Below, in pieces: positions 12,940 to 56,100 of a stretch of 64,000 nucleotides of DNA; the stretch's first letter is position 1, and every line of letters begins with the position of its first letter. The notes beneath the pieces are model-generated. The model saw only the letters and a program-made list of their open reading frames with translations. It was not told where the DNA came from and ran no database searches. The DNA comes from Trichoplax adhaerens. Its lineage: Eukaryota; Animalia; Placozoa. The position numbers and the translations under genes are program-made. The stretch is from NCBI RefSeq assembly GCF_000150275.1, contig NW_002060943.1, positions 7,258,026-7,322,025 of the forward strand, read 5' to 3'.

Positions 12940-15900
12940 ATGGACCAATTTAAATTAATCCTTTTCAATCTTATGTTAGGGCTAATTTGCCAACAAGCGA
13001 TCGCTCATTGCATCCAGCCAACTCTTCCAACACAAGCCCATTCCCGACAGAGTTTTCCATTTCAACACCGGCAAGAAAGAGCTATAGTACGAGGTAATTA
13101 TATATTGAATATGCAATCTATAAGTAATAAAAAAACTTCATCAATCCAATCGCATTTTCATGTCCTATTGGGTCTTTTTGTTAATCGCAATGAACTATCG
13201 GATCATATATGCTAGTTTAGTATTAAAAATGATTGGTCCATAAGTAAAAAACTCCATCAATCCAATCGCATTCTTATGCCTTATTGGGCCTTTTTAAATC
13301 CCAATCAGCTATCCAATTGTATGAAGTAGTTTAGTGTTAAAAATATAATAATTGATCGATATATTTGCTCAAGTTAGGATGGATCCATCTCCCCTTGTTT
13401 ACTGCTCTTTATGGACAGTATTTATCCTGGCTAGAGTTGGTTTGAACTGAAATAGAATAGCCGTCAATTTTATGTTGAGAAATTACAATATCAAGAGTTT
13501 TCCTTTCTACCCATTAGCTTATGTAGTAGCAATGATCACGTCTATCTTTATTTATTCAATCTTGACGACCATGAACAAGATGGATCGTTATTCCTTAGGG
13601 CAGTGCTTTGATTATTTTTCGTTCTACATACCAAAGCTATAGACTGCTACATGAATAGGACAGTCGATTGCTAACAGATCGACGAAAAGATGGAGCTAAT
13701 ACCATTTTGGGGGCTTAGTATTCATTGACCATGATACAAACTTGGAAACAAATTAATAATATCCTATAGTTCATCTTTTCCTATCATAGCCCACACGTTG
13801 CGACGACATTGGCTTGGGAATAAAGTTGAAAATGTCCGTTGATTCATCTTTTCCGATGGTGATGCACATATTACAACAATATTCACTTGGAAATAACTTG
13901 AAATTGCCTTGACTTTCAACTTTTCCTATCATGAATTCAAAGTGTCCTAACGTTAATCTCTTCCTGTCATGATTTGCATATTGTCCGGATATTAACTGGG
14001 GAATAAATTTATACTAACGTTAATCTTTTCCTGTCGTGATTTGCGTATTTGTCAGAATATAAACTTGGGAAAAAAATTGACACTAACATTAATCTTTTCC
14101 TATCATGATGCATATGTCGTGGCGACATACATTTAGGAATAAGTTCATAATGTCCTTACGTTTATCCTTTCCTGATCACGATATTGTGGTGATATCGATA
14201 TTAACTTGGTAATCAAATCGAAAATGTTCTAACGTTAATCTTTTCAATCATCATGAGTGACGATATCGATATTAACTTGATAATCAATTCGAAAGTATCC
14301 TAGCGCTCTTCTTTTCCTGATCTCTATGTTATGACGATATCAAATTAACTTAGTAATCAATTCGAAAATGTCCTAAAATTCATTTTTTCTTGATCTCTAT
14401 GTTGTGACCATATCGATAATAACTTGGTAATCAATCAGATAATGTCTTAAAGTTCCTATCATGATCCTAGACGTTGGACGATATCGGTATTAACTTGGTG
14501 ATCAACTAGAAAATGTCCTAACGTTTATCTTTCCCTGATCTACGAGTATATATTGTGATGATATCGATCGTAACTGGGAATCAATTAGAATTGCCCTAAC
14601 GTTCATCTTTCCCAGATCTATATATTATGACGATATTAATATTAGCTTGGTAATCAACTACAAAATACCTTAACGTCCATCTTTCCCCGATTTCTATATT
14701 ACAATAATGTCAATTTAGTAATCAATTAGAAAATGTCCTAACGTTCATCTTTCCCTGATCTATATAGTGTGATGATATCGATCGTAACTTGGGAATAAAT
14801 TAGAAAATGTCCTAGCGTTCATCTTTCCCTGATCTATATGGTTTGACGATATCGATAGTAACTTGGTAATCAATTATAAAGTGTCTTAACATTCACCTTT
14901 TCCTACTATGATCCATAGTTCCATACGTTGTGATGATATTGATAGTAACCTGGGAATAAATTAGAAAATGTAATGTTGATCATGATCCCTATACACGTAT
15001 TTGACGATATAGATAGTAACTTGAGATTGAATTGAAATTATTCTAACGTGAATCATTTCCTATCCTAACTCATAAGTTAAAATGATATATTTAAGAACAA
15101 ATACATGTCCTAACCTTTTCATAATGCTATTGAGGTAGGTGGAAGAGAATCATCGATAGCTTACACTGGTGGCCAAGCCAAAATCACCTGTAAAATTTTA
15201 AAATCCACTGATCGCGATCCTCCATCCAAGCCGGAATGTACTAATTTGTTCTGTCTCAATAAGCGTAAACTTTACTTTTATTGCTCTAAAACAGAGCAAT
15301 ACAACTATAAGGATAATTGCTTAGCTTGCTGGAAATTTAATGGTAATCTATTGCCTGTAGAAGGACAAGATCAGTTTTCCTTCGGTTTGGAACAGAAATC
15401 GGATACAAATTCAGCTTATTATTATTTCAATCTGATTATTAAAAATGTCCATAAGGAGAATGAAGGAAATTATTCGTGTTCACTAACGATGCTTGAATAC
15501 GGATATAGTCATACAATGCAGGACCTAAGCACTCTTCAAGTCAAAGGTTACCTATTCAACTTGAATTATTAACCAAATTAACGTTTAGATAGAAGTTTTA
15601 GTTTGCAATAAACGAAAAGTTCGTTTTTTCTTTCCAATCGTCCACTTTAAAATAGAAGAACAAACTGGCACTATAAAACCTGATTTGTTATTTACAATTA
15701 TATCTTTTAGATTCATGGATTCAATGCAGTAAGGAAAAAATGATGGAAGTACAGTATGATAACGATGGCAATCAAGCTAAGATTTATTGCAAAGCTTATG
15801 GAGCTCCACCTTTGCATTTCCAATTCCAATGGTATCGAATAACTGGAAGGAATAAGACAAAATTAAGTGGAAATTATAATGCAAATCAAGGATCATCTAT

Positions 15901-18900
15901 TATCAATGTACTACCAATCGATCGAAGAAAAGTAGAACAAACTGGAAAGATTATTTGTATTGCTCGAAATACTTTGATCAAGGATTCTCAATGTCAATAT
16001 CAAGGCAATGTAAATCCACTAGATGATGCTAGTAAGTCAATTCAATCTTGATTAAGGTATAGATAGGGAAAGGAATAAAATAGCTAGAATATTCATTTAC
16101 TGCACAAAATAAGAGTAGAATTCGTATGTCAGTGTGAGCCATATTGACCTACGCACTACCCGATTTTAGTAAATTGATTCTATCTTGGTTAAAACATAGA
16201 TAGGGAAAGGAATAGTTTAGCTGAAGTATTCCTTTGCTGCCTAAAATAAGAGTCAAATTCTCTATGCGAGTATCAGTAATACTAATCTACAAAAAATGGC
16301 TTAAAAATCCAGTGATGTATCGACAAATAAATGAGTAGACTACATTAATCTGCGTCCTTATACGTATGTTGATTACGGAATAGATACGAGATTTATTCTT
16401 GATTTATTCTAAAGTTACTGAACACATTCTGTATTTGGATATAGAAAGATTTTTCCCACGCCATTTCTTAGCTAAAATAAGTACTAGACCTTTCATGCTA
16501 AAATTATTGTCATAGATAATCAAAGATAGATCAATTTGGTTCCACGGTAAACTTATTTTTCCCTATATTACTTGCGATATTTCTACTATCAACTAGCTTG
16601 GATGGTCACGCTGATTAGTATTTTAGGATCTGGAACACTAACGTTATGTATTATCGGCGTATTGCTAAAAGTAACACGAAATCAGACTATCACTGGGTTG
16701 GCCAGAACCTTAGTGACTATACTCAGTAGAGAAGGTAAGTCAAGGTTTATTAGCGCATAGCTTATAAAATTCAATATTCTACTTTACTCGAATTATTAAA
16801 GATTCAATCTTTTTTCTATAACACTAAACTAAGATTTATTAGTTCATAGCTTATAAAACAATTCTAGATAGGCTTTATAATAAATTCAATATTCTCCTTT
16901 CTCGAACCATTACACCTGCTATTTTTAATCAATAATAACAAAGTCAAGATTAATCAGCTCATAGCTTATGAAATAATTCTAGATAAGCTTTATAAAAATT
17001 CAATATTCTATCTTACTTATAAAATAATTGTAGATAGACCTTACAATAAATTGAATACTCTACCTAACTCGAAGTCAAGGTTTATTAGCTCATAGTTTAT
17101 AAAATAATTCTAGATCGACTCTACTTGTATAAAAATTCGATATTCTTCTACCTTACTCGAACCATAAAAGATGCTATCTTATGTCATAATGACAAAATCA
17201 AGATTTATTAAATCATAGTTTATAAAATAATCCTAGATAGGCGTTGTAATAATTCAATATTCTATCTTACTCAAACCATAAAAGATGCTATCTTTTGTCA
17301 TAATAATTAAGTCAAGGTTTATTAGCTCATAGCTTCTAAAATAACTATAGATAAGCTTTATAATAAATTCAATATTCTACCGCTCTCAAACTATAAAAGA
17401 TTTTAACGTTTATCATAATAACGGTTATGCAACAGCTTGTATCTAGAGTAGTAGCCTCCGGATTTTCAATCAGTACTTACCCAGTCGTAACTTTCTCGCT
17501 ATACTCTTCCGTTCATAAGCTTGCTTGGAATTACTATCATTTCTCTTATAAAATAGGATAGAGTAGCTCATACGAGTAAGTTATAAAATATCATGTCATT
17601 AGTGTTATAATAAAGCCTTGAGCATATTGATAGTCAGTTCGTCGAAGAAAAATTATTTTATATAATAATTTTCGTCTTGATCTTCGGATATCTTATATAT
17701 TAATGTATATTATTGCGTCTATCATGATAGTCTTGATAATTCAAACACAACCATTCTTAACTGAAGATATAGAAGAATTTCGTAAGGAAATTGGAGCAAC
17801 TTATAAAGCCAGAGTCTTCTATATTGACAATACAACTGCATGGGCAGATATGAGAACAGTTGTGGCAAATTTAAAAAGATTTAAAGTTGTCATATGTATC
17901 ATTAGTGAAAAAATACTGCATGAAGGTGTCAGTAACCTACAATTTAAAGATTTTTTATGTAAAATTATTACTAAATGTATAGAAAAAGAGAATGTGACCG
18001 GTATGCCGCCTATACTTATTCTTAAAAAGGAGGAATTTAATCATAGCCACTATCCCGATGACGTCGATCAATTAGAATGCATTGATATTCACTTAAAGGA
18101 CGAGCAATTTCAGCAATTGCTAAAATCTCATTTAACGAATGAGCAAATTCAATGGCTAGAAGATCATTTTACTGATCAGCAATTCAAGCAACTGCTTAAA
18201 ATATATTATAACGATCAATCATTTCAGCTATTGCGAGAAAATTGTTTAACCCATGAGCAATTTCTAATGTTACTTGTAAGTCATTTAGACGATGACCAAT
18301 ATCAGCAATTACTAAAAACTCAATTAACTGGTGAGCAAATTCAATACCTAGAAGATCACTTAAATCAGCGGCAATTACGACAATGGATTAAAAATTATTT
18401 CACAAATCAACAACTTCAAATATTACAAGAATCTCGTTTATCAACCGATCAAGAATTACAGCAATTGGTAGAAAACCAGTTAACTGATGATCTACTCCAA
18501 TCATTCCTGCAAACTCGTTTAACAGATGAGCAAATTCAATGGTTAAAAGATCATTTAACTCCTCAGCAATTAAAGCAATTGCTTAAAAATTATTCCATCA
18601 ATAGACAATTTCAGCCTTTGCTAATAGCTCTTTTAACCAATGAGCAATTGGAACTGCTGCTTCAAAGTCATTTAATCGATGATCAATTCCAACAATTACT
18701 CAAAAATAGCCTAACTAGTCAGCAAATTCAATGGCTAGAAAATCATTTAGCTGATCAGCAAAGCAAGCAATTTCAACAAGTACAAACAAATAGGTTAAGT
18801 ACTGAACAATTTCGTCAGTTGACAGAGAGTCATTTAACCCATGATCAATATGAACAATTACTCGAAAGCTTTGCTCGATTTTACTATTACGATTGGAAGG

Positions 18901-18905
18901 ATTGA
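12940..18905 (+). CDS. Type I membrane receptor, paralogue 1: signal peptide, 2 Ig domains, TM, TIR/SEFIR-like domain, helical repeat tail
   Basis: Exons 12940-13093, 15139-15546, 15711-16031, 16597-16734, 17731-18905 join in frame, all introns phase 1. Signal MDQFKLILFNLMLGLICQQAIA; Ig1 KITC...CWKFNG...LIIKNVHKENEGNYSC; Ig2 KIYCKAYGAPP...FQWY...IICIARN; TM WMVTLISILGSGTLTLCIIGVLL. The TIR-like call rests on hydrophobic pattern only. Confidence 0.85.
13750..15070. repeat. Degenerate minisatellite, about 60 bp unit, about 20 copies, intron 1 of receptor 1
   Basis: GATATCGAT..TAACTTGGTAATCAATTAGAAAATGTCCTAACGTTCATCTTTCCCTGATCT recurs roughly every 60 nt. Confidence 0.9.
16737..17420. repeat. 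Tandem array, 90-130 bp unit, about 6 copies, starting at the intron 4 donor of receptor 1
   Basis: AAGTCAAG(G/A)TTTATTAGCTCATAGCTTATAAAATAATTCTAGATAG-like units near 16737, 16827, 16941, 17072, 17194, 17309. Confidence 0.85.
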
Positions 18906-19434
18906 ACGCCTTTGGCGTAAATCGTCTTAGTCCATCCATAAATAACGAATAGGATTAAAGTTAGAGCTATGGTTGAGAAGGAAACTACTATAAAAGATTA
19001 ATAGTAATTTTCCTATCACTGCTCTATCTAACTCAGAATTGAATAACATAGGATTGGCTGGCATGGATCTAAGTCCGTTCAGATCAAGTGAATAATCCAA
19101 ATGCTTATCTCACGCTATTTCTCTACATTATTCGATATTATAAATCATTAATCAAATTTAAAGAGAATTTACAGTGAAAAAATATCCAGGATTAGTAATG
19201 TTCTAAAGAATTTAGAATGTATGACTTCTGATGTAATCATCAATCCAATTTTATTCCATGTTATTTCTTTACTTCATTTTATTAATCACATATCGAGTTT
19301 AAAAATCATCCACGAATAGAAGAGATCACCAATTGAAAATAGTGTTAAAAGAATGATTATTGTAATTATTGATCGAAATTTTATTTATATCATTTCTCTG
19401 CTCTATTCTGTTGTATTTCTGAATCATCCATTAC

Positions 19435-19755
19435 CTATCGAGTTCAAATAAAATCTAATACAGAGTATCTCTAATTACGAATATTGTAATAAATGATACC
19501 ATTAATTAGCAACTAAGTTTAAATAAATTCCTTAACAGAGAGTCTCATCAATTAAAAATATTTTAACAAATGATACCATTAATTAATTATTGGCACCTAC
19601 CCGAGTTTAATTAAATAAAATTACCTAATACAGAGTCTCCCCAATTAGAAATATCTTTAATAAGTGACAACATTAATTATCAGCACTTGCCGAGTTTAAA
19701 TAAAGTCCCCTAATACAGAACCTCACCCAATAAGAAATATTGCAATAAATGATTA
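19435..19755. repeat. Tandem array, 80-90 bp unit, 4 copies
   Basis: TAATACAGAGT.TC.C.AATTA.AAATAT...AATAAATGATA.CATTAATT near 19456, 19533, 19626, 19711. Confidence 0.8.
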
Positions 19756-20587
19756 TTGTTGTAATCATGGATCCAATTCCATCTACATCTGTATGATTAA
19801 ATTTGATTCTTCATTATTTTCTGACTCATCGAATCTTATACTAAGACTTTAATAACATTTACAGTAATTTAATCTGCATGATTAAATTGGATTCTACAAT
19901 ATTTCCTTGCCCATTTAATTTTAAACTGGGGCTTTAATAATATCTACTGTATTTTAATCTATATTATTCTACGCGATTCAGTAGGACTTATTACATGTGA
20001 GGAGATGGGATAAATTAGGGTTAGGGTAGCAAATAGGATTACGATCATTGATGCAATGCCATCGACATCAAGTCTACGATACTATTCTATGTTAATTCTT
20101 TCTCTACTTTACAATATTAACCACATATCCAAATGTAGTAAAAGGACTAAAAGTAGAGTCCTTTGTAGTTTTTAGTATGTAATTAGTATTATTTTACTAT
20201 ACAAAATACCTAGAAAGTGATAGTGTCTTTAAGTTTTACCCTGCCAAATCATCATGTCGCCATCTTTTCTTCTTCATTATTTTACAAGGTATTATATAGA
20301 TTACTATACAAGTAGCCCTATAGAGCAAATGCCTAATCTAAAGAAAGGGCGTTTGATCGTCTATTCAAATTGTAAAGAAATTTGACTTAGTAGCAAAACC
20401 CTATCCTTAGAGAAAGGGGATTTATAACATGACGATAAAGTACTGTAAGGTAGTCTATACTCGTACAGTTACAGTACAATCTGACGCTAAAACATCAACT
20501 GTCAATACTCGCGAATACTAAGCGATACTAATGTCAGAAAAGTAGTCGTAGTAGTCATATAAATTTTTTGATAAGCGATTACTGTGA

Positions 20588-21580
20588 TCTTTATAAAAAG
20601 CGAATTTTTCCGGATTTGTGTCCGATATAGTTTTCGGATTCTGGGACCGGTCGGGTTTGTGTCCGATATAATTTTCCTGTTTTGGAACCGGTCGGGTTTA
20701 TTTTTAATTTATGTCTGAATTATAATTTTTCTGTTTTAATTTTTGGATTTTTGTTCATGAAAAATATCGTAAGAGTTGATTTTTGAGATATGGACTTTTT
20801 GTTATGAATTTGAAACTTTGGAATTTTATGGCGTGACTTGAAGTCACATTAGGAGATTTAGTGAGGAAAATAGAAAATAAGATGGAAATTGGCAGAGGTT
20901 GTGTTGATTGTTAGGTAGTTAGAATGTTATTTTTATGACTAAATCTTGATGTTTAAAGGTTGATTTTTAGCTTTTTATAGTGTATTAATGATAGAAATTA
21001 TATTAGAAATGAAGTTTGATGTATTTTTATAGTTAGCTTATTGCTTTTATAGTATTTTGTAAGGGAATCGTAGGGTAAATTGTGTCTGAACTTTGAATGA
21101 TTTTTGTTTTCTTAAATGGTGCAAAGTAGTTTTGTAAAACGGATCTTAAGAGCGATTGGTTAGCAAATGTTTAGTTTTAAATACCTCTGACGGCTCTATG
21201 AAGCCTATAAATGATAGTGCAATTAGAAAATTTAGAGGGAGAGTAGAAGAAGATTTTATTTGAAGAACTTGTTGAATTTAAAAGGCCTTCGGGGTCGAAT
21301 TGTCGTAAGTTAAAACGTTCTTGTTTTTGAAAGGTTGTTTGGTCGTTGACAGTTTTTAAGTCTGTCATTTATTTTAATAATACTTAAAGCTAAGTATTTG
21401 TAAGGTTATTCGGTTTATACTTCTCTCCATTTTTGTTTTGAAATAAATTGCTGTTCGGTTATTTCCCCAAATTTTATTTGGTGTCAAAGTATTAGCGTTA
21501 AGTCGACCGGAGTGCAACGAAAGTAGAATCAAAGTTTGTTAAAGTTTTGTAGCTTGATCTCTACACATTTCATTTCATTA
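20588..21580 (+). mobile_element. Dispersed repeat family A, copy 1 (non-autonomous element; Helitron-like 5' start A|TCTTTATAAAAAG)
   Basis: 21138-21580 is nearly identical to the reverse complement of 42365-42807 and similar to 45491-46140. The left part has a short internal duplication (TTTGTGTCCGATATA...ACCGGTCGGGTTT twice). The left boundary and class are uncertain, and no 3' CTRR hairpin is seen. Confidence 0.7.
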
Positions 21581-22496
21581 CACAAATATAAACAGCATCT
21601 ACTTATGGCGAAAAATCGTGAATTAGTAAATAATGTCATCAATCATTTCAGTGACTGAGCTAAGTCCATCAACATCGGAAGGTACCATCCAATTTTATTC
21701 CATGCTGATTTTTCTCTACTTCATATTCGAATTCATCACTTATAAACAAAGATAAATAAAGTTTCTCAGATAAAACGTATGGCAAATTAGAAATAGTACA
21801 ATAAAATTACTTTTCATTGATGTGATTCCAATTACATCGACTAAATTATCTTGAATTAATTTAGATTGAATTGAGAACTTCATAATCATCTGTACTGCCG
21901 TATACTCTGATCTACTATTTGATTTTTACACTATACAAAATATATAGCGTCAAAATAAACTTTTCAAGTCTACGAAATTTTCAGCTAAACTGGATAGATT
22001 CATGACAATTAAATAACATTTTCTCCAGTATTGATCACTTAAACGTACTATAATAAATGAGCAACTGCATATTATACATTTACATAATTAGTGAAATGAT
22101 TAATATGATGATGTCACTAACAAATAGCATTCTACAGTACTGCACCTTCTATTAATCAAAACAAACTTTTAACGTCTACAAAACTTTCTAAACTGGCTAG
22201 CCCCAAGATAAATAAACAATTTTTTCCCAGTATTGATCACTTAATTCTAATTTTATCATTGATCATTCATGATCGATAGTCAAAATATTCTTTACTAAGG
22301 ATAAGCGACATACGATTTTCTGACATTAGAAATCAATACGAATTCGAACAAGAATAAATTGCATTGCCATTCTTATTGACTATTTCTTATCAGACTATTT
22401 CGATTTAATGAGAATAGTACATGAGGTAGATAAAGTCAAGACTGTACCAACCTTCCTATAACTGATTTTGCTGTTAAATGTAACCGAGAAGAAAAG

Positions 22497-25400
22497 ATGA
22501 ATTACTACAGAATTCTAGCTGGATGGTTTATCCTCTTCATGAATAGTTCATTCATTCATACCGGTAAGAATATCAATGATTGATCTATTCCTTAGCTTTA
22601 TAATCTTGTGTTTAGAATTTTCAACTTTGATCTAACAACATGCCACACCCCTTGGAAAAGATTCGAATTGCCGATCAACTATACCACCTTATGAACCGCT
22701 ATCAGGTAACTTCTTGTGCTGAAGTTCGTTGTGATATCGATAATTAGAATGCCATTACAACTAGTGGATATCCGATATAATCACTTTACATTAGGTAAAA
22801 CTAGGCTATTACGAATTATCTAATCATATTATCACTTGTTTGCAATCAGCTGGTATCTTTTACTATAGTTCGATATATTGCTCGTAAAATAAAATGGCGT
22901 CCCGACTATGGTAGATATCTAAAGTAATCCTTCTACAATCGCCAAAAACAGATTATGACTAACATTAGATCAATGTATTGACTACTATCAGTTTATACCT
23001 TGCACTCAGTATATAATGTTGATAAAATAAAATAGCATCACAGCTGACAGATATTCAAAGTAATCCTTCTACAGTAGTAAAGCTTGGGCTACTTAGGTTA
23101 TCACTAGATTATTCCATTCTATGGATTGTTATCAGCTTGTATCTTCTACTATAGCTCAATAAATTGTAGAGTAAAATAAAAATTACATCACAGCTGGCAA
23201 ATATGCAAAATAATCCTTCTATAATGACAAAACTAGGATTATTAATACTGTTACTAGATCATTCTATGGATTACTAACAGCTTGTATCTTATACTATTGT
23301 TCAATAGAATATTGTGATAAAATAAAACAGCATTACAGCTGATAAGTATCCAAAGTATTCTTTCTATAAACGCAAAACTAGGGTTACTAATACTATCAGT
23401 AGATCATTCTATCGATTCCTATCAGCTTGTATCTTGTACTAATAGCTCAATAGATTGTGGAGTAAAATAAAAATGGTATCACAACGGTCAAATATCCAAG
23501 TAATCATTAAACAATTCCTAATCATAAACTACTGCTGATAATAATTTAATCATTCTATCGACACCTAACAGCTTGTATCCTACATCCGTTATAGTCCGAT
23601 ATAATTTCCGTAAATTGAATTATATAACAGTTAGTTGATATCCGAAAGTAATCATCCTATAATAGCCAAAACGACTAAGACTGTAACTAGACCTTTCATC
23701 AACTGCTGTCAGTTTGCATCCTACACTACTGGACTAGTACAGCGCAATAAAACGTCGATGGAGTAAAATGCCATTATAGCTGATGGTTAATATGCTAAAG
23801 ATCATCTTTAAGCAGAAATATGTTATATCGATCGTAATATAGTAGATAGATTGTCATTAGGGTTACCGATTGTAAAATTAATTCATTTTCCAGTAAAGGA
23901 ATCATTACTTGAAATTAGTAAGAAATTAACTTCAACTATAAATTACTTAATCAATTGATAGCTATAGCACCAATTTGATGACAATATAGACGATTATATT
24001 TCAATCTTGATTCTAATAGTGTACCGATATGATTCATGGAAGATGATATTAGATTGAAAAATGATTAAAGTTTCTATTGCCTCTGCAATTGGGAGAGTAT
24101 GATAAATATCCTAATAACTTGCTATCGTTTCATGTATTTTCATTTAGATGAGCAAATATCAAAACTTAATAGCAGCATAAATCTGTTATCAGCACAAGCT
24201 TATGTTGGAGCTGATGGCTACATAAGATGTATAATAAAAATCGATCCAGAACCTACCAGCAATTGTAACAAAAAAAATGTAGCGAAGCAATGTAATATAT
24301 GCCCAGAGGAACTGTGTCCTGGATGTCGAGATTCTCCAGATAAAACGTGCTGGGATTGCTGGTTTAGAAATGGTGAAAAATTACCGATGCAAGAGCCCAA
24401 TAAATATGATTACGACATTTCTCAGAATCATCCCTCTGGTCAACACCTGTCTCAATACTATGAATTTCACCTTATCATTAGAAATGTCACTGAAAAGGAT
24501 GCTGGATATTACAATACTGAACTAAAAAGATTATGCGAATATGAAGGAAGTTTTTCAAATCATAGCACTAAACTAACGATAAAAGGTGCCGTAATGACTA
24601 ATATAATATCTATCTTTGATTTGTAGAATGATATTTGACTAGCTCTACAATTAAATATTCTGCTAATATGGATACAAATACGGATATCTCCAATATATTG
24701 GAGATATCGTCAGTATTTTTCAAATTGTTAATGTTAATCTTATAGCAGAACTTTTTCAAAGTGATAGAAATTTATTTGAAAATTAATACGTGGAATAACT
24801 TATATTTTATCTCTGCGTCGAGAACCACAAATAGGATGATAAAAAATCGATAGCATCTGTTACAGGGGTATCAACATCCGTTACTTTACGTTTACTAGTA
24901 GTTATAGAAGTCATGACATCCTGATGAGGAAAATTATGAAGTATCAGCAGATTTATTAGAGTGAAAAAAGATCAGATGATATGGTACTACGTTATCAGGA
25001 TAGCAATAGGTACAAGCGTTTCTACATGCTGATGCACATAAGAATGTTCTACCCAGTATCTAGCTCTATTTCAAATAGATTAAAAATTATTTTCTATTTA
25101 TTATATACTATGATCTAAGATATAGATATATAAATACCCTTTCTATATAGATTTGGTATGAGTATAAAATCAGGACCATACTAAGGATTACAGTTAAATA
25201 TATATTCACTGTACATATATACATATATACTGCGAATGCAGAATACAGACAGAAGAGTACATAGTTGTAGCCTTTACATCTTTAGAAAGCATTGTGAGAT
25301 CAAGTTAGGTATAAACACTTCTACATGTTTGTGTACATAAGAACATTTTACATAGCATCTAGCTGCATTTCAAATAGACTAAAATTATTATCTTTTTATA

Positions 25401-28243
25401 ATGTACAATGATATTAGATATAGAGTTGGTTAGAGCATAAAACTAGGATCATACTAAGAATTACAGTTAAATGTTTACTTAACAAAATCATAATTTAGAA
25501 ATTTTGTATCTCATACTTATTGATAGTATATTATCCATATAGAATTTAACATTAATTAGAGTGATGATTAGCAAAGTACTAGGAAATTGATTGAGATAGA
25601 TATAAAGATATTCCGTAGATAGTAAGAATTCAAGTAGAGTGAAGTGATTGATTACATATTTATTGATAGACTACTATAGATATGTAGACATCAATGTAAC
25701 AGGAACTTTGAGTTAGAATAATACAGAGCTAGAGTTAATAGGCTAATCTGGGCATACAATTTCAGATACAACAGAAATTTAGAGTCCGAATTATGGAAAC
25801 TTATAGATAAATAATTCAGAATTCATATTTCATCCATACAAAATGTAGGATGGATAGCAATGATCCAAGAATCATTCATTAGCATCATCTTTAGTAAAAG
25901 GACTCTATGAGAATTAGAAAGAGTAGAAAAGACTCCCTTTCAGATTTTCTGTCGATATCTACTAAATATCAATTTGACTTTCCAATAATAAATTACTTCT
26001 TATTTCATATATAGAACCGTCATTTAATTGTCTTCAAAAAACAACTATGGAAGTACTAGATACAAAAGACGAATATTACGTCGACATATTTTGCAGCGTA
26101 GAAGGAGCTCCGCACTCACATGTCCAATTTCTATGGTTTTCTGAACACGGAATTATTGCGACAGACTCAGAGGGTGAATGTAGTTATTCTAACGGATTGA
26201 ACATAACTAGGAGATTGCGGATTAGTCGAAAGAGAGCAGAAAGGCTAAAAATGATTTATTGTAATGTTACCAATTCTTTAATAAAGAACCGCTCATGCCT
26301 CTATGAGGCCTATATTAGTCCAATACCTGATTATAGTAAGCATACTTCATTTTAATAATAGAATAGCGGATAGAATAGATCTAATATAGGAGCTTACAAT
26401 ATTGCTATTCTTTACATAGTATCTTTTCTTAATTTTTTAGCTTGGAGTTTCATCGTGAGTATCATCTTAGGCTCCGCAATATTATCTGTCATCAGTGTTA
26501 GCATATATCTAAAAGCAACAGAAAATCGAAATCTAATATCTATGCTAGAGACCTATATCTATATAAAAAAAACGAACGGTTAGTTAAGATTATAAAGGAC
26601 ATTTTATGAAGATTTATACGGATCTAATGTTATTTAGCACACTACACTTTTTGTCAATAATTTCGATAACCATATCTACTAATTAATAAAATATGCCAAT
26701 AGAATGAAAGCTAGGATAAAGATATTTAGTAACTTTTATAAATGCTGAAGTTATACTCTTATAGGTTGCTCGTTATTATGTAAATAGCTTATACCAACAA
26801 TATAGGATAAATAACAGCTTACGGATATTGATGTTGTAACCGCTATACCCACCTAATTTATTTTGCTTACCTCGATATTTGCGTTAATAGCGCCTGTACT
26901 ATATCGTTATAAAGTACGCCATATCAAAACTAACTAATAGTAAAGGAAGCGAACTCTATTCTACGCAGATTAGAAAAAAATTACAATGGAAACTAGGATA
27001 TAATTATATGTATTATATCGTTGTAAAATATACAGTAGTAGATCCTTCTAAAATAATCAAAAGGATCATAAAGGTACACTCTTTATAGATAGAACTGTAA
27101 TTGAAATGAATTAAAATTATGAATTTAACATCGCATCATTACTTCAACGCTATATCTATATCAAAAATCACAAGAAATAAAATTGCAATGAATTCAAATT
27201 AGGGGTTACAAGAATTGAAAGTATACTTTACTTTAGTAAAATATTATCAATTGAAATTAGGTGTTTATGTCACACTGTTGGGATGTATAAATGCACAGTT
27301 TCTATATTATAAAGCTAAAGTAAATGAATTTTCTATTATGTTGTTGATGAAATTACAGAAAAAGGAGATTACAAATTTAAAATATAGCCATAAATCTAGA
27401 TATTACACTATATGTGTTATATTTTTTCTAGAAGGAAGGGGAAGTTACATTAAAGTTTATCTTAAATCATTAGCTATTATTATGAATTAGTTTATGTTAA
27501 AGCATATCTTAAGCTATTCTTATAAATTTACGTTATTTCTATACTTCTAGATATTACATATGTTATTTTCTGCTTGATTTATATTAGAATATATCTTCAG
27601 TTATCAACTATTCTTACAAGGTTACATTATATCCATAGTTCTAGATAATATATATGGCTTTTTTTATTGGTCTGTATTAAATTATCAACTATTCTTATAA
27701 ATTTACGTTATATTCATAGTTCTAGATACCATATGCACTGTATGTTTTTATTTATATTAGAATAAATCTTTAACCATTAACTATTATTTTTTTATTGTCA
27801 TAACAGTATTGTTGATACAATCACAACCATTCATAACAGAAGATATGGAAAAATTCTGCCAAGCGATTACTACAAAACACAATGTCAACGTTCTTAGGGC
27901 CATCCCTACTCAGTGGATTGATATGAAAACCATTCGAGAAAGCTTGACAAGATTCAAAGTTATTATATGCGTCATAAGTGAAGCAACTAAATCGAATACA
28001 GTACAAAAAAGATTTCAATTCAAGGATTGGGTTTGTAATATTATTAAAGGTTGTCTGGAAATAAGTAACGATGATATACCGCCCCTATTTATAATCATGA
28101 ATGATAAATTGAATCAAGATGAATATGAAGATGATATCAATACTTTGGAGTACATTACTTGCAACGATAAATTAACAGAAGAGCAAAGAGAACGACTAGA
28201 AGAAAGCTTTTCTCGATTTTATGACAAAGACTGGACGATTTAG
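22497..28243 (+). CDS. Type I membrane receptor, paralogue 2: signal peptide, 2 Ig domains, TM, TIR/SEFIR-like domain
   Basis: Exons 22497-22563, 24148-24585, 26015-26335, 26441-26578, 27807-28243, all introns phase 1. Exons 3 and 4 have the same lengths as in paralogue 1 (321 and 138 nt). Signal MNYYRILAGWFILFMNSSFIHT; Ig1 YIRC...CWFRNG...LIIRNVTEKDAGYY; Ig2 IFCSVEGAP...FLWF...IYCNVTN; TM WSFIVSIILGSAILSVISVSIYL. The cytoplasmic domain aligns with paralogue 1 (QPF.TED.E.F, W.DM.T, RFKV.IC.ISE, QFKD, LEESF.RFY..DW). Confidence 0.85.
22760..23800. repeat. Degenerate tandem array, about 145 bp unit, about 7 copies, intron 1 of receptor 2
   Basis: ATCAGCTTGTATCTT...AAAATAAAA..GCATCACAGCTG...AAAGTAATCCTTCTA recurs near 22888, 23026, 23176, 23321, 23466. 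Confidence 0.85.
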
Positions 28244-52661: not shown

Positions 52662-53107
52662 TTATCCATTTATTTTGCTTTTATTTTGATCACCGAATCC
52701 CCAAAATTCATTAGTTTAGACTAAAAATAGACTATACCTGACTATTACAATACAGCAGCAATCGCTTTACGAGTATATCAATGACATGTTGAAATACTCG
52801 CACATTATTCCATGTTGCAACGTTGTAAATCCTTCTCGTATACCGACAATGAGTCTTTGTTTGACTACTAAACTATAAATTGAAGCCGTTAAAGTCAAGA
52901 TGGAGTACAACAATCTGTTGTTACTTATACATTACAGTAGAAATGAAATCGAGTGATAGGATTGTATTGAAAGTGCTGTGATAGCTTATTACTGCTACAG
53001 TGTTGTCTACTGCACGTAATACAGTATTAGTGAGAAATGAAAAACCGAAATAGCTAAAACTAAAAATAGCCATATTATTGACGCTCCACACAGGCTGATT
53101 GGAAATA

Positions 53108-56100
53108 ATGGAAGGATGGAATAATATTGACAACGCTTTACACATTTATGAAAATCATCTCTGCCATGATTTACCTATAGAAGGGTTGTTAACTGAAATC
53201 AAGAATGAGAATTTAATATCAGAGGAGGAGTACCAATTGATCAATTCAAAGTCATCTCGAAAACAAAAAAACAGAACGCTGTGCAGTATGTTAAAGTCCA
53301 AGAAAGAAAAGAAAACAAACATGACTTCCTTTTGCAATTTATTATGTATGCAACCAGAACCTAAAATACAAAACTGCGGTTGGATTTTACATGATGTGGC
53401 TAATGATCCAGGTACAGTTACGAACAGATAATTATAAAATAATTATTATTCCTTTCGTTTATTAATATATTTACTTGTTTAATAAAATTATTTACGTGAT
53501 TTGATTGATATATATGGTTTTCTATTGGAACGACAACGCGATTTACGATGGAATGGATATGTACATATATGCAATGATCGAATGGAATGATTATCGTATG
53601 GTTATTATACGGATATACGTATACTAAAACCACCAATACACTGCAATGCTTATACACTAAATCGCCATTCAATCGTCATTCAATACAAATTACCATTACT
53701 ACTCTACTCTTCTCTACTTGTGTCTTACTATACGTCAATACTATATAAACTCTATTATTCTATCATCGCATAATTCCATATCAATCATAAAGATTGTAAG
53801 TATCGTTGTATTGGTATATTAAATATACAATGACATTATTAAATAGACTATTGTATGTACTGTATTTTTTTTCTACTATATATCATCACATTTAAATTTA
53901 CTTAAATAGTCATAGTATAGCATGTATAATAAAAGATTTGACGATCGAGAATAGTAAAGATATATATAGTATTGTGTGAAAACTCGTTTAGATTTTATCA
54001 TGTAGCAAAAAAGATATACAGTATTTAATCATAATATATTCTATCTTCTGTATTTATGGCATTAATTTAGGATATTTTTGTTAGACTTATATAGAAATCA
54101 GTTTAGTTAATCTAGTCATGTCAGGTTAACTTTAAATATACTATAATAAAGTGTAATAAGTTTATGAATAAATGATACAGCGAAAATATTTGACAAAACA
54201 GTATTTATCAGCTCCTGTATTATAATTTATAATAATTTGTTAAAGATCACACAATATGCAAGGTATAGTTCAAATGAAAATCAGTACATACTGTATAATT
54301 TTTTAATTTGAAAACAAAACTTTTTAATTTCATCCTCCATATTAACTCTCGTTTCGTAACACAGTTGGGCTGAATTATATTCGCGATTTCATTTGCGCAT
54401 TACAAGAAGGAAAATGTAAGAACAATCTTATAAGAATTATGATTATCGGACCAGAAAATGTAGGTAAAACAACTTTACTCAAAGTGCTAATTAAGCAGTC
54501 ACTATTGGCTAATGAAGCACCAACACAAGTAGCTAGTGGTAATCATCCGCTAATAGAATTGATTACATTCGATACTGGTGATATGGTGAAGACTGGATTG
54601 GGCACTCTCGCTGATAGTAAAGTTGGATTAGCAGTTCTTCAATCGCCATCTTTACAAGTTACAAGACAGACCTTATCCAATATGAAATCGCAAAGAACGA
54701 ATGTATTCGATAAATTACTTCGCAGCAAGTATAACAAACTTAGACCGAAACTTTCTAAGATACAAGAGGCAAATACAGATAGTAATGAAAGTAATTAATC
54801 ACAGCAGTCAAAAATAGACAATCTACATGCTGTATTGTGCGACTTCGGAGATCAGGCAGAATATCACGTTACACATCAACCATTTATGTCGTGTGATAGT
54901 ATTATGTTCTTGTATTTAATATCGCTGAAGAGATTAATGACGCTATACAACAAAGGAACAACTCAAAATCAGATATAACCTACTATGCAAGAATGAATGA
55001 ATGGTTATCATCTGTACATGGATGCAAGGGGTTAAGCCATGGTTTAGAGGGTAATGTTAGAAATGAGATTACGATCGATGGTAAAAATTATGAATTGCCT
55101 ATTGTCATTGTCATCGGTAGTCATGCAGATAAGATTGTAGCTAATAATGAAGAAGAAAAAAATAGAAAAATACAAGCAGCTTATAACAAGATATCACATG
55201 AATTTGGCCGTAAGGCCTTTTCCAAACATCTATACTTATCACACTTAGCTATGAATGGTGATGGCAACGATAACAGCAAAGCAACTCAAGATCTAAGAGA
55301 CGAGATACGTAAACGGTTATGTCAAACCTTTACTAAAATTGCAGAAAAATTACCATTTATAACGGATCCTATTCCAGTTCGATGGTATGAAATCATTCAA
55401 ATACTTCGTGGAGAAAGAGAAGATAAAACAATAAAGAAGTTACTTACTAAAACACAAGTTAAAGACTTGATAGACAAACATCATCTATCTAAGCAAGGCG
55501 AGAAGTTAGATAGTTTATTATCTTACTTGCATAATATCGGACAAATTGTCTATTGCGATAAAGACGAGATTCTGAGTAATTGGGTCGTATCGGATATTGA
55601 TTGGCTAATTGAGGTGTTTTGTTCATTAATTCGAATTTCATTTTTCAAGTCTTCTCATGCTGATGACTGGAGTGACTACGAGAAGATTCAGAATATAGGT
55701 AAAATAAGCGAAGAATACATTGGAAACGTTTGGAGCAAATTTAATTTAGACGATGAAGAAAGAAAATACGTATTATCTCTTATGACTCACTACGATATTC
55801 TTTGTGAAGCAAGTGAATTACAAGGAAAAGATCATATCTATCTTATTCCTTGTCTGCTAAAGACACGACCTAAGAGCGATGCATTATATCCATCGAATAG
55901 CACTACATCGAAATACATCTATTTAGGGTTTGATGAGAAGGAGTTACCTTATATTTCTTATAATATCTTTTACTGCTAGATTTCTCGATGTTTGCAGAAG
56001 CGTAAATGGAATAATGGCAGAGTTAAACTATATCAAAACTGCGCTTCATTTCGAATTAGTCCTGGTATTGATTTGATTATCGATAAGTTATCAACGGTCA

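What the first reader, a model, noticed from the sequence alone, without database searches (positions are those of the whole stretch)
12940..28243. Tandem pair of divergent Ig-Ig-TM-TIR/SEFIR-like receptors (IL-1R-like architecture)
Seen: two paralogous five-exon genes with identical intron phases and a signal-Ig-Ig-TM layout. The ~140 aa cytoplasmic exon alternates hydrophobic strands and amphipathic helices like a TIR/SEFIR fold: bA VLIIQT, aA EDIEEFRKEI, bB RVFYID, aB DMRTVVANLK, bC FKVVICIISE, aC FKDFLCKII, bD PPILILKK, then HYPDDVDQLECIDI (like the TIR P..L..L.YID segment). Known: Ig-TM-TIR is the IL-1 receptor architecture, also described in sponges and cnidarians. Inference: a lineage-specific innate receptor family too divergent for standard TIR profiles (boxes 1-3 are eroded). 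There is no Glu at the WCxxE NADase position, so a scaffold rather than an enzyme; the two paralogues might work as a receptor/co-receptor pair.
Basis: partly seen in the sequence, partly recalled or inferred. Interest (0 to 1): 0.85.

Follow-up and report, generated by a model that had tools for sequence, protein, structure and literature searches.

The report
Placozoan Ig receptors with TIR-like tail
Two neighbouring Trichoplax genes encode membrane receptors with two antibody-like outer domains and an inner domain that probably, but not provably, has the fold used by Toll/interleukin-1 receptors, and one outer loop of the second gene varies far more between strains than the rest of the gene.

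Summary
The window is Trichoplax adhaerens scaffold 1. The two genes are TRIADDRAFT_52089 and TRIADDRAFT_52091, and they are the only two copies in the genome. Gene 1 has five exons and gene 2 has six, not five. Every intron is phase 1. Layout: signal peptide, V-like Ig1 with a Cys-rich B-C loop insertion, Ig2, TM, and a roughly 135-aa alpha/beta cytoplasmic domain.

RNA contigs from two studies join the Ig1, Ig2, TM and last exons of gene 2 at GT..AG sites, so the splice-based refutation fails.

The TIR reading is plausible but unproven:
- **Against:** Pfam, PADLOC, NCBIfam and PDB sequence searches and hhalign give nothing.
- **For:** language-model neighbours of both paralogues are all TIR/SEFIR clusters, and UniRef auto-names gene 2 "TIR domain-containing".

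New here: a 102-nt patch in Ig1 of gene 2 (24253-24354) is hypervariable. It has 27 variable positions, pairwise dN 0.17 against dS 0.03, and every Cys is kept. Introns and the other exons are almost invariant.

The published placozoan immune survey found no transmembrane TIR receptor. I rate this a new variant of the Ig-TM-TIR receptor kind.

The parts
12940..13093 (+). Gene 1 (TRIADDRAFT_52089) exon 1: signal peptide plus linker
   Evidence: ATG at 12940, hydrophobic N-terminus, donor G|GTAAT at 13094. Matches the H2 model P0030 at 48 of 51 residues.
15139..15546 (+). Gene 1 exon 2: Ig1 with a Cys-rich B-C loop insertion
   Evidence: Sub-threshold Pfam hits: Ig_3 E 0.0024, ig 0.0068, V-set 0.03. 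Phase-1 AG/GT borders. 133 of 135 residues identical to H2.
15711..16031 (+). Gene 1 exon 3: Ig2 (I-set/C2-like)
   Evidence: Ig_3 E 1.3e-5 at 26.1 bits, I-set 5.6e-4. UniRef name 'Ig-like domain-containing protein'.
16597..16734 (+). Gene 1 exon 4: transmembrane helix plus juxtamembrane segment
   Evidence: Kyte-Doolittle 19-residue mean of 2.06 at 16605. Borders. Present in the public model P0002.
17731..18120 (+). Gene 1 exon 5, first part: TIR-like alpha/beta domain (about 130 aa)
   Evidence: 40% identical to gene 2's domain. ESM neighbours are all TIR at 0.93. AF2 pLDDT 62.7 with E-H-E-H-E-H-E order.
18090..18866 (+). Gene 1 exon 5: about 20 degenerate Q-rich repeats of 12-13 aa (L-T-x-E-Q-x-Q-x-L-L type)
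   Evidence: 17 motif anchors, several of them spanning two units. Only one short DNA-level repeat survives. Gene 2 has a single unit.
18867..18905 (+). Gene 1 C-terminal tail motif (S-F-x-R-F-Y-x-x-D-W) and stop codon
   Evidence: 13 of 21 residues identical to the gene 2 tail. Also present at the end of the environmental relative P0004.
22497..22563 (+). Gene 2 (TRIADDRAFT_52091) exon 1: signal peptide
   Evidence: 22 of 22 residues identical to the H2 model P0007. Donor G|GTAAGA.
22661..22705 (+). Gene 2 exon 2: short linker exon
   Evidence: 14 of 14 identical to P0007. The loose ends of RNA contigs upstream of 24146 equal 22674-22703.
24148..24585 (+). Gene 2 exon 3: V-like Ig1 with an 8-Cys insertion between the B-strand Cys and the C-strand Trp
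   Evidence: V-set E 0.0058. RNA contigs cover it and splice it. Single copy in the genome.
24253..24354 (+). Hypervariable patch inside Ig1 of gene 2 (Cys-rich B-C loop)
   Evidence: 27 variable positions in 102 nt against 8-14 in 1232 nt elsewhere, Fisher P 3e-22 to 3e-25. Mean pairwise dN 0.168, dS 0.033. All 8 Cys kept in 7 haplotypes.
26015..26335 (+). Gene 2 exon 4: Ig2
   Evidence: I-set E 0.065 alone, 2.4e-4 in the full-length P0007. 106 of 106 identical to H2. Spliced in RNA.
26441..26578 (+). Gene 2 exon 5: transmembrane helix plus juxtamembrane segment
   Evidence: Kyte-Doolittle mean of 2.24. Joints 26335|26441 and 26578|27807 in RNA contigs.
27807..28243 (+). Gene 2 exon 6: TIR-like domain, one tail repeat, the S-F-x-R-F-Y-x-x-D-W motif and stop codon

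Best explanation
These are two tandemly duplicated, apparently placozoan-restricted type I membrane receptors. Each has a signal peptide, a V-like Ig domain carrying a disulfide-rich insertion in its B-C loop, a second Ig domain, one transmembrane helix and a cytoplasmic alpha/beta domain of about 135 aa. That domain is most likely a very divergent member of the TIR/SEFIR (STIR) fold. It is followed by one (gene 2) or about twenty (gene 1) short Q-rich helical repeats and a conserved C-terminal motif.

Shown here:
- the gene structures;
- the splicing of gene 2;
- the paralogy and the narrow taxonomic distribution;
- the failure of all standard TIR profiles;
- concentrated, amino-acid-changing, Cys-preserving polymorphism in the Ig1 loop of gene 2.

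Inferred:
- The variable Ig1 face binds a ligand that is itself diverse, whether microbial, symbiont-derived or conspecific.
- Binding brings cytoplasmic domains together.
- Those domains recruit the cytosolic TIR/SEFIR adaptors that Trichoplax is reported to have (MyD88-like TIR-CARD and SEFIR-DD proteins), by homotypic contacts, towards NF-kB-like or MAPK outputs.
- With no conserved Glu at the weakly aligned NADase position, the domain would act as a scaffold rather than an enzyme.
For: - **Identity and copy number:**
- **Exons and phases:**
- **RNA joints** in two studies, plus a recorded RNA run.
- **Ig evidence:** several sub-threshold Pfam Ig families on all four Ig exons and UniRef's Ig-like name.
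- **TM and signal hydrophobicity:**
- **TIR-like reading, language model:** ESM Atlas neighbours of both paralogues, which are only 40% identical, are exclusively TIR or TIR/SEFIR clusters at 0.90-0.93.
- **TIR-like reading, public name:** UniRef names B3RLR2 'TIR domain-containing protein'.
- **TIR-like reading, weak similarity:** in-register similarity over alphaB-betaC-alphaC to Trichoplax TIR_2 domains appears twice.
- **Hypervariability:**, with a single genomic copy.
- **Literature:** Kamm et al. 2019 (PMC6321704) report TIR/SEFIR adaptors but no TM TIR receptor in placozoans and state that unknown receptors may feed the pathway.
Against: - No sequence profile recognises TIR or SEFIR. 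This covers Pfam at E up to 10 on six family sequences; the TIR, TIR_2 and SEFIR HMMs run over the whole genome, which miss these loci while finding 19, 5 and 2 others; PADLOC and NCBIfam; and PDB sequences.
- hhalign against a TIR_2 alignment gives probability 1.5%.
- The Box 1, Box 2 (BB-loop RDxxPG) and Box 3 motifs are not recognisable by eye.
- Both AlphaFold models are low confidence (pLDDT 56 and 63, four-sequence alignment).
- For the gene 2 model, TIR is tied within 1 Z unit with CheY-like, flavodoxin and small-GTPase folds.
- The ESM neighbour method returns all-same-clan lists for a third of shuffled proteins, by its own notes.
- No ligand, partner or expression site is known.
Confidence: 0.6

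Rival explanations
1. The receptors are real, but the cytoplasmic module is a different flavodoxin-like alpha/beta domain, either a lineage-specific invention or a CheY/Toprim-like relative, and not a TIR/SEFIR homologue. Signalling would then run through the Q-rich repeats and the conserved C-terminal motif, or through other partners, not through TIR adaptors.
Against: Language-model neighbours of two 40%-identical paralogues are only TIR/SEFIR. UniRef's automatic name is TIR. TIR hits align 126-133 residues of the roughly 140-aa domain, against 108-118 for receivers. A type I Ig receptor with a C-terminal alpha/beta domain of this size is, in animals, the known context of TIR; that last point rests on established knowledge, not on a test here.
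Confidence: 0.25
2. Whatever the cytoplasmic fold, gene 2 is a polymorphic self/non-self or mate-recognition determinant (allorecognition, fusion control or gamete recognition) and not a microbe sensor. The hypervariable Ig1 loop would bind the same or the paralogous molecule on another individual.
For: Extreme diversity is confined to one membrane-distal Ig loop. Two alleles sit at near-equal depth within single runs (41.3/33.2 in X15, 105.3/96.5 in X5). dN is well above dS and every Cys is conserved. The pattern resembles the polymorphic domain 1 of other invertebrate allorecognition Ig proteins, which is a comparison from my own knowledge and not tested here.
Against: The library holds no placozoan allorecognition gene or assay that could be linked to this locus. 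The same polymorphism pattern is expected for host-pathogen or host-symbiont arms races. Gene 1 is not hypervariable, at 2 of 135 differences between H1 and H2.
Confidence: 0.3
3. The patch variation is not allelic. It would come instead from RNA editing, from a hidden paralogue or from assembly error.
For: All reads evidence comes from Logan contigs of coded runs, and phasing by depth is my inference. Six listed differences were not shown by the tool.
Against: Substitution types are mixed, with A>G only 8 of 31. Run X12 covers introns at low, even depth and so behaves like DNA; it carries 12 patch differences but none in about 1400 nt of intron. The independent H2 genome model P0007 has 18 mismatches and a 6-aa indel in Ig1, but 0-3 in every other exon. 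The exon is single copy in the reference at both DNA and protein level.
Confidence: 0.05

Closest known systems
Vertebrate IL-1 receptor family, including SIGIRR/DIGIRR and IL-1RAPL
   Different: No TIR profile match and no Box 1-3 motifs. There are two Ig domains, the first V-like with an 8-Cys loop insertion. The tail carries Q-rich repeats and a conserved terminal motif. No IL-1-like ligand is known in placozoans. By published argument the architecture probably arose independently (PMC2858798).
Ig-TIR (IL-1R-like) receptors of non-bilaterians and amphioxus: Hydra HyTRR-1/2, and the sea anemone and amphioxus Ig-TIR proteins
   Same: The same domain order in early-branching animals. They are regarded as lineage-specific reinventions (PMC2858798; PMC5094078; PMC6321704).
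   Different: Those proteins carry TIR domains that standard profiles detect, and the placozoan pair does not. No hypervariable Ig loop is reported for them in the papers read.
IL-17 receptors and other SEFIR proteins, including the Trichoplax SEFIR transmembrane protein described by Kamm et al.
   Different: The SEFIR HMM finds two other loci in this genome but not these. The ectodomain here is Ig, not fibronectin-III.
Polymorphic invertebrate Ig-superfamily recognition molecules (Hydractinia Alr1/Alr2, amphioxus VCBP), compared from my own knowledge
   Same: Hypervariability is concentrated in the membrane-distal V-like domain, with strong excess of amino-acid-changing differences and many alleles in few samples.
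   Different: No sequence relationship was tested or found. Those proteins do not carry a TIR-like cytoplasmic domain. Here the variable element is a Cys-knot insertion in the B-C loop.

Membership tests
TIR domain (Pfam PF01582/PF13676, clan STIR) | Significant match to a TIR sequence profile | tested here: not met
   No TIR family at E up to 10 for six family sequences. The genome-wide TIR_2 and TIR HMM searches miss these loci. PADLOC and NCBIfam find none. hhalign against a TIR_2 alignment gives probability 1.5%. UniRef's automatic name says TIR, but its source could not be checked.
TIR domain (Pfam PF01582/PF13676, clan STIR) | Five-stranded parallel beta-sheet flanked by helices (flavodoxin-like, about 135-160 aa) | tested here: inconclusive
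TIR domain (Pfam PF01582/PF13676, clan STIR) | Box 1, Box 2 (BB-loop RDxxPG) and Box 3 (FW) motifs | tested here: not met
   By inspection of alignments A1 and A3. The invariant residues are a Trp after betaB, a D/N-M-x-T turn, a K...C-x-I-x-E strand, and P-P before betaD. None reproduces the boxes.
TIR NADase subgroup (SARM1, plant and bacterial TIRs) | Catalytic Glu in alphaC (WCxxE position) | tested here: inconclusive
   Under the only alignment obtained, which is not significant, the position holds F or L in all four members. No conserved Glu lies in the predicted alphaC. An invariant Glu ends betaC instead.
SEFIR domain (PF08357) | Match to the SEFIR profile | tested here: not met
   The SEFIR HMM finds C1414:6761542 and C1390:206086 but not these loci. 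There are no Pfam hits.
Immunoglobulin superfamily | Ig-domain profile match with the B-strand Cys, C-strand Trp and F-strand Y-x-C pattern | tested here: inconclusive
   All four Ig exons hit several Ig families below the gathering cut-offs; the best is Ig_3 at 26.1 bits against a cut-off of 30. The Cys/Trp/Y-x-C pattern is visible in Ig2 of both genes and in Ig1 of gene 1. Ig1 of gene 2 lacks the F-strand Cys. UniRef names gene 1 Ig-like. No structure was predicted for the ectodomain.
IL-1 receptor family | Ig ectodomain, single TM helix and cytoplasmic TIR in one spliced transcript | tested here: inconclusive
   Domain order and splicing are shown. The identity of the last domain as TIR is not established.
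IL-1 receptor family | IL-1-type cytokine ligand and MyD88/IRAK coupling | not testable with these tools
   Kamm et al. report MyD88-like and IRAK-like genes lacking some canonical domains, and no true TLR. No binding data exist.

The most novel reading that the evidence does not exclude
Gene 2 is the first polymorphic recognition receptor of Placozoa: a V-like Ig domain whose disulfide-knotted B-C loop is kept hyperdiverse, wired directly to a TIR-like signalling domain. Two further, smaller variable spots lie in the same domain, around 24427 and 24525-24553. The diversity island is about 100 nt long with sharp edges. It lies inside otherwise near-identical haplotypes and has no donor copy in the genome. 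It may therefore need either very old balanced alleles trimmed by recombination or a targeted diversification process.
Probability: 0.35. Interest if true: 0.85.

Novelty: new variant of a known kind. Interest (0 to 1): 0.66.

Why it matters
The published survey of placozoan immunity found TIR and SEFIR adaptors but no transmembrane TIR receptor. It left the input of the pathway open (PMC6321704).

A pair of Ig-Ig-TM receptors with a TIR-like tail would be a concrete candidate for that input. It would also add a fourth non-bilaterian or early-branching lineage to the cases where Ig and TIR were combined.

The hypervariable, positively selected Ig1 loop makes gene 2 a directly testable candidate for strain-specific recognition in an animal with no described allorecognition or variable immune receptor genes. 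No paper in the searched library mentions either gene by any identifier.

Tried and rejected
- **Profile scans (no TIR or SEFIR found):** Pfam, PADLOC and NCBIfam scans of the cytoplasmic domain and its relatives.
- **PDB sequence searches:** run with one sequence and with a profile, both gave only noise.
- **hhalign of the family against an 11-sequence TIR_2 alignment:** probability 1.5%.
- **Local hmmsearch of the family profile against 428 ORFs from Trichoplax TIR/SEFIR loci.** The top hit is a TIR exon but is aligned one beta-alpha unit out of register, so it is not evidence. The second hit is in register at only 5.9 bits.
- **Foldseek against PDB:** no match at E <= 0.001 for either model.
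- **Second AlphaFold model (gene 1 domain):** the C-terminal third is disordered and the fold search is uninformative.
- **Search for more family members:**
  - The word-index search found only the query.
  - The metagenome scan found no relative.
  - A profile search of the own genome found only the two genes.
  - Hits P0005 and P0006 of the exhaustive search are spurious. One is a repeated ASH/HYDIN Ig protein and the other a low-complexity repeat.
- **RNA editing and a hidden paralogue** were rejected as explanations of the patch variation.
- **My first guess for the gene 1 exon 1 donor** (at about 13044) was replaced by the GTAAT donor at 13094, which the H2 model uses.
- **No joined CDS was built from window exons.** Full-length comparisons used the public models P0007 and P0030 by id.


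Full report
**Where and what**

The window is G000:C1414:7258026-7322025 of a 105.6-Mb assembly with 1414 contigs. The two genes are TRIADDRAFT_52089 (gene 1, partial public model P0002) and TRIADDRAFT_52091 (gene 2, partial model P0001) of Trichoplax adhaerens, on a 13.26-Mb scaffold. The Trichoplax sp. H2 assembly has full-length models: TrispH2_005208 (P0030, 728 aa) and TrispH2_005209 (P0007, 487 aa). Exons were handled one by one by reference, and full-length comparisons used those public models by id.

**Gene structure**

Reading the frames and splice sites and mapping the public models gives these exons:
- Gene 1: 12940-13093, 15139-15546, 15711-16031, 16597-16734, 17731-18905.
- Gene 2: 22497-22563, 22661-22705, 24148-24585, 26015-26335, 26441-26578, 27807-28243.

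Gene 1 has five exons. Gene 2 has six, because its signal peptide and a 15-codon linker lie on two small exons that are one exon in gene 1. All nine introns are GT..AG and phase 1, and the Ig2 and TM exons have identical lengths in the two genes. The paralogues are 29-40% identical exon by exon, and the cytoplasmic exons give E 6e-28. Protein and profile searches of the whole genome find only these two copies.

**Transcription and splicing**

Assembled contigs from X11 (1927 nt) and X5 (1481 nt), which belong to different studies, carry Ig1, Ig2, TM and the last exon joined at GT..AG sites. X15, recorded as RNA-Seq, also shows the 105-nt intron removed. The unaligned upstream letters of these contigs equal window 22674-22703, so exon 2 is joined to exon 3 as well. 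Gene 1 splicing is inferred, not observed.

**Ectodomain**

Each of the four Ig exons hits several Pfam Ig families, always below the curated cut-offs. The best are Ig_3 at 26.1 bits for Ig2 of gene 1 and V-set at E 0.0058 for Ig1 of gene 2. UniRef calls gene 1 an Ig-like domain-containing protein.

Ig1 of both genes has a long Cys-rich insertion between the B-strand Cys and the C-strand Trp. Gene 2 has eight Cys there, including three CxxC pairs. Ig1 of gene 2 lacks the canonical F-strand Cys. Hydrophobic signal and TM segments are present.

**Cytoplasmic domain: negative evidence**

- No TIR or SEFIR family appears at E up to 10 in Pfam for the two window domains, P0002, P0003, P0004 or P0007.
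- The TIR_2, TIR and SEFIR HMMs run over the whole genome find 19, 5 and 2 other places but not these.
- PADLOC and NCBIfam give nothing, and PDB sequence searches give noise.
- hhalign against an alignment of Trichoplax, amphioxus and other TIR_2 domains gives probability 1.5%.
- A local profile search against ORFs of the Trichoplax TIR/SEFIR loci put a TIR exon first, but one beta-alpha unit out of register, so it does not count. The second hit aligns alphaB-betaC-alphaC in register at 5.9 bits, the same weak register as hhalign.

By the same token, membership in the TIR family is not established.

**Cytoplasmic domain: positive evidence**

- The ESM Atlas feature search returns only TIR or TIR/SEFIR clusters (0.90-0.93) for gene 2 and, separately, for gene 1, which is 40% identical. 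The tool warns that such scores are leads.
- UniRef names B3RLR2 (gene 2) 'TIR domain-containing protein'. This is an automatic name whose source I could not check.
- AlphaFold2 had only four sequences to align:
  - The gene 1 model has pLDDT 63, with four clear units and a disordered C-terminal third.
- Structural matches of the gene 2 model:
  - It is followed within 1 Z unit by a CheY-like decarboxylase wing domain (10.5), with receivers around 9.
  - TIR hits align more of the domain (126-133 residues) than receivers do (108-118).
- Foldseek has no match at E <= 0.001 for either model.

My reading is that a flavodoxin-like fold is likely. TIR/SEFIR is the best single candidate, at about two chances in three, but it is not demonstrated.

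**Distribution**

An exhaustive phmmer search of 1.84 billion cluster representatives found six proteins:
- the two Trichoplax genes;
- P0003, on a 1.3-kb Logan contig;
- P0004, the last exon of a similar gene on two metagenome contigs;
- two spurious repeat proteins.

The P0003 contig has two 78-80% DNA matches to another T. adhaerens scaffold, which hints at a placozoan relative. The P0004 contig has none. A metagenome pattern scan found no further relatives.

**Tail**

After the domain, gene 2 has one L-T-x-E-Q-type helical unit followed by S-F-x-R-F-Y-x-x-D-W. Gene 1 has about twenty degenerate 12-13-aa units before the same end motif. The repeats are old at the DNA level. P0004 has different Ser/Gln-rich repeats but the same final unit and motif.

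**Hypervariable Ig1 loop of gene 2 (new here)**

In the laid contigs, differences from the window pile up at 24253-24354. That is 27 variable positions in 102 nt. The remaining 1232 coding nt have 8 listed differences, or at most 14 if the six unshown ones all lie there (Fisher P 3e-25 to 3e-22).

Two variants at near-equal depth occur within single runs (41.3/33.2 in X15, 105.3/96.5 in X5), as expected for two alleles. Phasing by contig and depth gives six haplotypes besides the reference. In each of them 7-11 codons change the amino acid and none is changed silently, and all eight Cys are kept. Mean pairwise dN is 0.168 against dS 0.033 in the 35-codon patch.

X12 covers introns at low, even depth. 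It has no difference in about 1400 nt of intron but 12 in the patch. Neutral diversity is therefore near zero, and relaxed constraint cannot explain the island.

The independent H2 genome model differs from the window at 18 residues plus a 6-aa indel in Ig1, but at 0, 0, 0, 0 and 3 residues in the other five exons. Gene 1 Ig1 differs at only 2 of 135. The exon is single copy at DNA and protein level, and substitution types are mixed. Hidden paralogues and RNA editing are therefore unlikely.

Smaller variable spots lie at an 18-nt indel after 24427 and at 24525-24553. By the usual Ig strand pattern these would fall in loops at the same end of the domain as the B-C loop. That placement is inference.

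**Mechanism proposed**

Shown: two expressed (gene 2) or modelled (gene 1) type I Ig receptors with a conserved alpha/beta tail, and strong diversifying or balancing selection on one ectodomain loop of gene 2.

Inferred: the variable face binds diverse ligands, receptor clustering brings the tails together, and the tails recruit cytosolic TIR/SEFIR adaptors. Kamm et al. 2019 list 16 TIR proteins in Trichoplax sp. H2, including MyD88-like TIR-CARD and SEFIR-DD proteins. [quoted passage not shown] Neither gene's identifiers occur in that paper's held supplements or anywhere in the searched library.

Ig-TIR combinations in sea anemone and amphioxus are argued to be independent inventions (PMC2858798; PMC5094078), so homology with vertebrate IL-1R is not implied.

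The main rival is that the tail is a non-TIR flavodoxin-like domain. A functional alternative, compatible with either fold, is allorecognition or mate recognition instead of microbe sensing.

**Limits**

- The reads evidence comes from assembled contigs of coded runs, so strain identities are unknown and depth-based phasing is my inference.
- Both structure models are low confidence.
- Gene 1 was not tested with reads.
- The receptor/co-receptor idea and the scaffold-not-enzyme idea remain untested.

Noticed in passing
window 53099-53431 and 54993-55979 (+): About 25 kb downstream of gene 2, an ORF with a CARD domain (E 2.2e-8) is followed by an ORF with a COR-A domain (E 7.3e-16). These are probably exons of a CARD-Roc-COR (ROCO-type) signalling gene. 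A death-fold gene therefore lies close to the candidate receptors.
   Followed up: no
window 24427 and 24525-24553: There are two further variable spots in Ig1 of gene 2. One is an 18-nt in-frame insertion after 24427 in run X15, which matches the six extra residues of the H2 model. The other is a cluster of four amino-acid-changing differences at 24525-24553.
   Followed up: partly
window 26441-26768: In run X15, one contig removes the 105-nt intron but then reads through the TM-exon donor at 26578 into the next intron. This may be an unspliced or partly spliced transcript, or DNA carry-over (record 16).
   Followed up: no
G000:C1414:6761542-6761997 (-), about 0.5 Mb upstream on the same scaffold: The best SEFIR-profile match of the genome (30.9 bits, full-length domain in one ORF) lies on the same scaffold as the two receptor genes. 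It may be the SEFIR transmembrane protein discussed by Kamm et al..
   Followed up: no
L027:830-1108: The 1.3-kb Logan contig that encodes the relative P0003 has two 78-80% DNA matches to T. adhaerens scaffold C1410, not C1414. The relative therefore probably comes from another placozoan and sits in a different neighbourhood, or the contig is chimeric.
   Followed up: no
I did not examine it.
   Followed up: no
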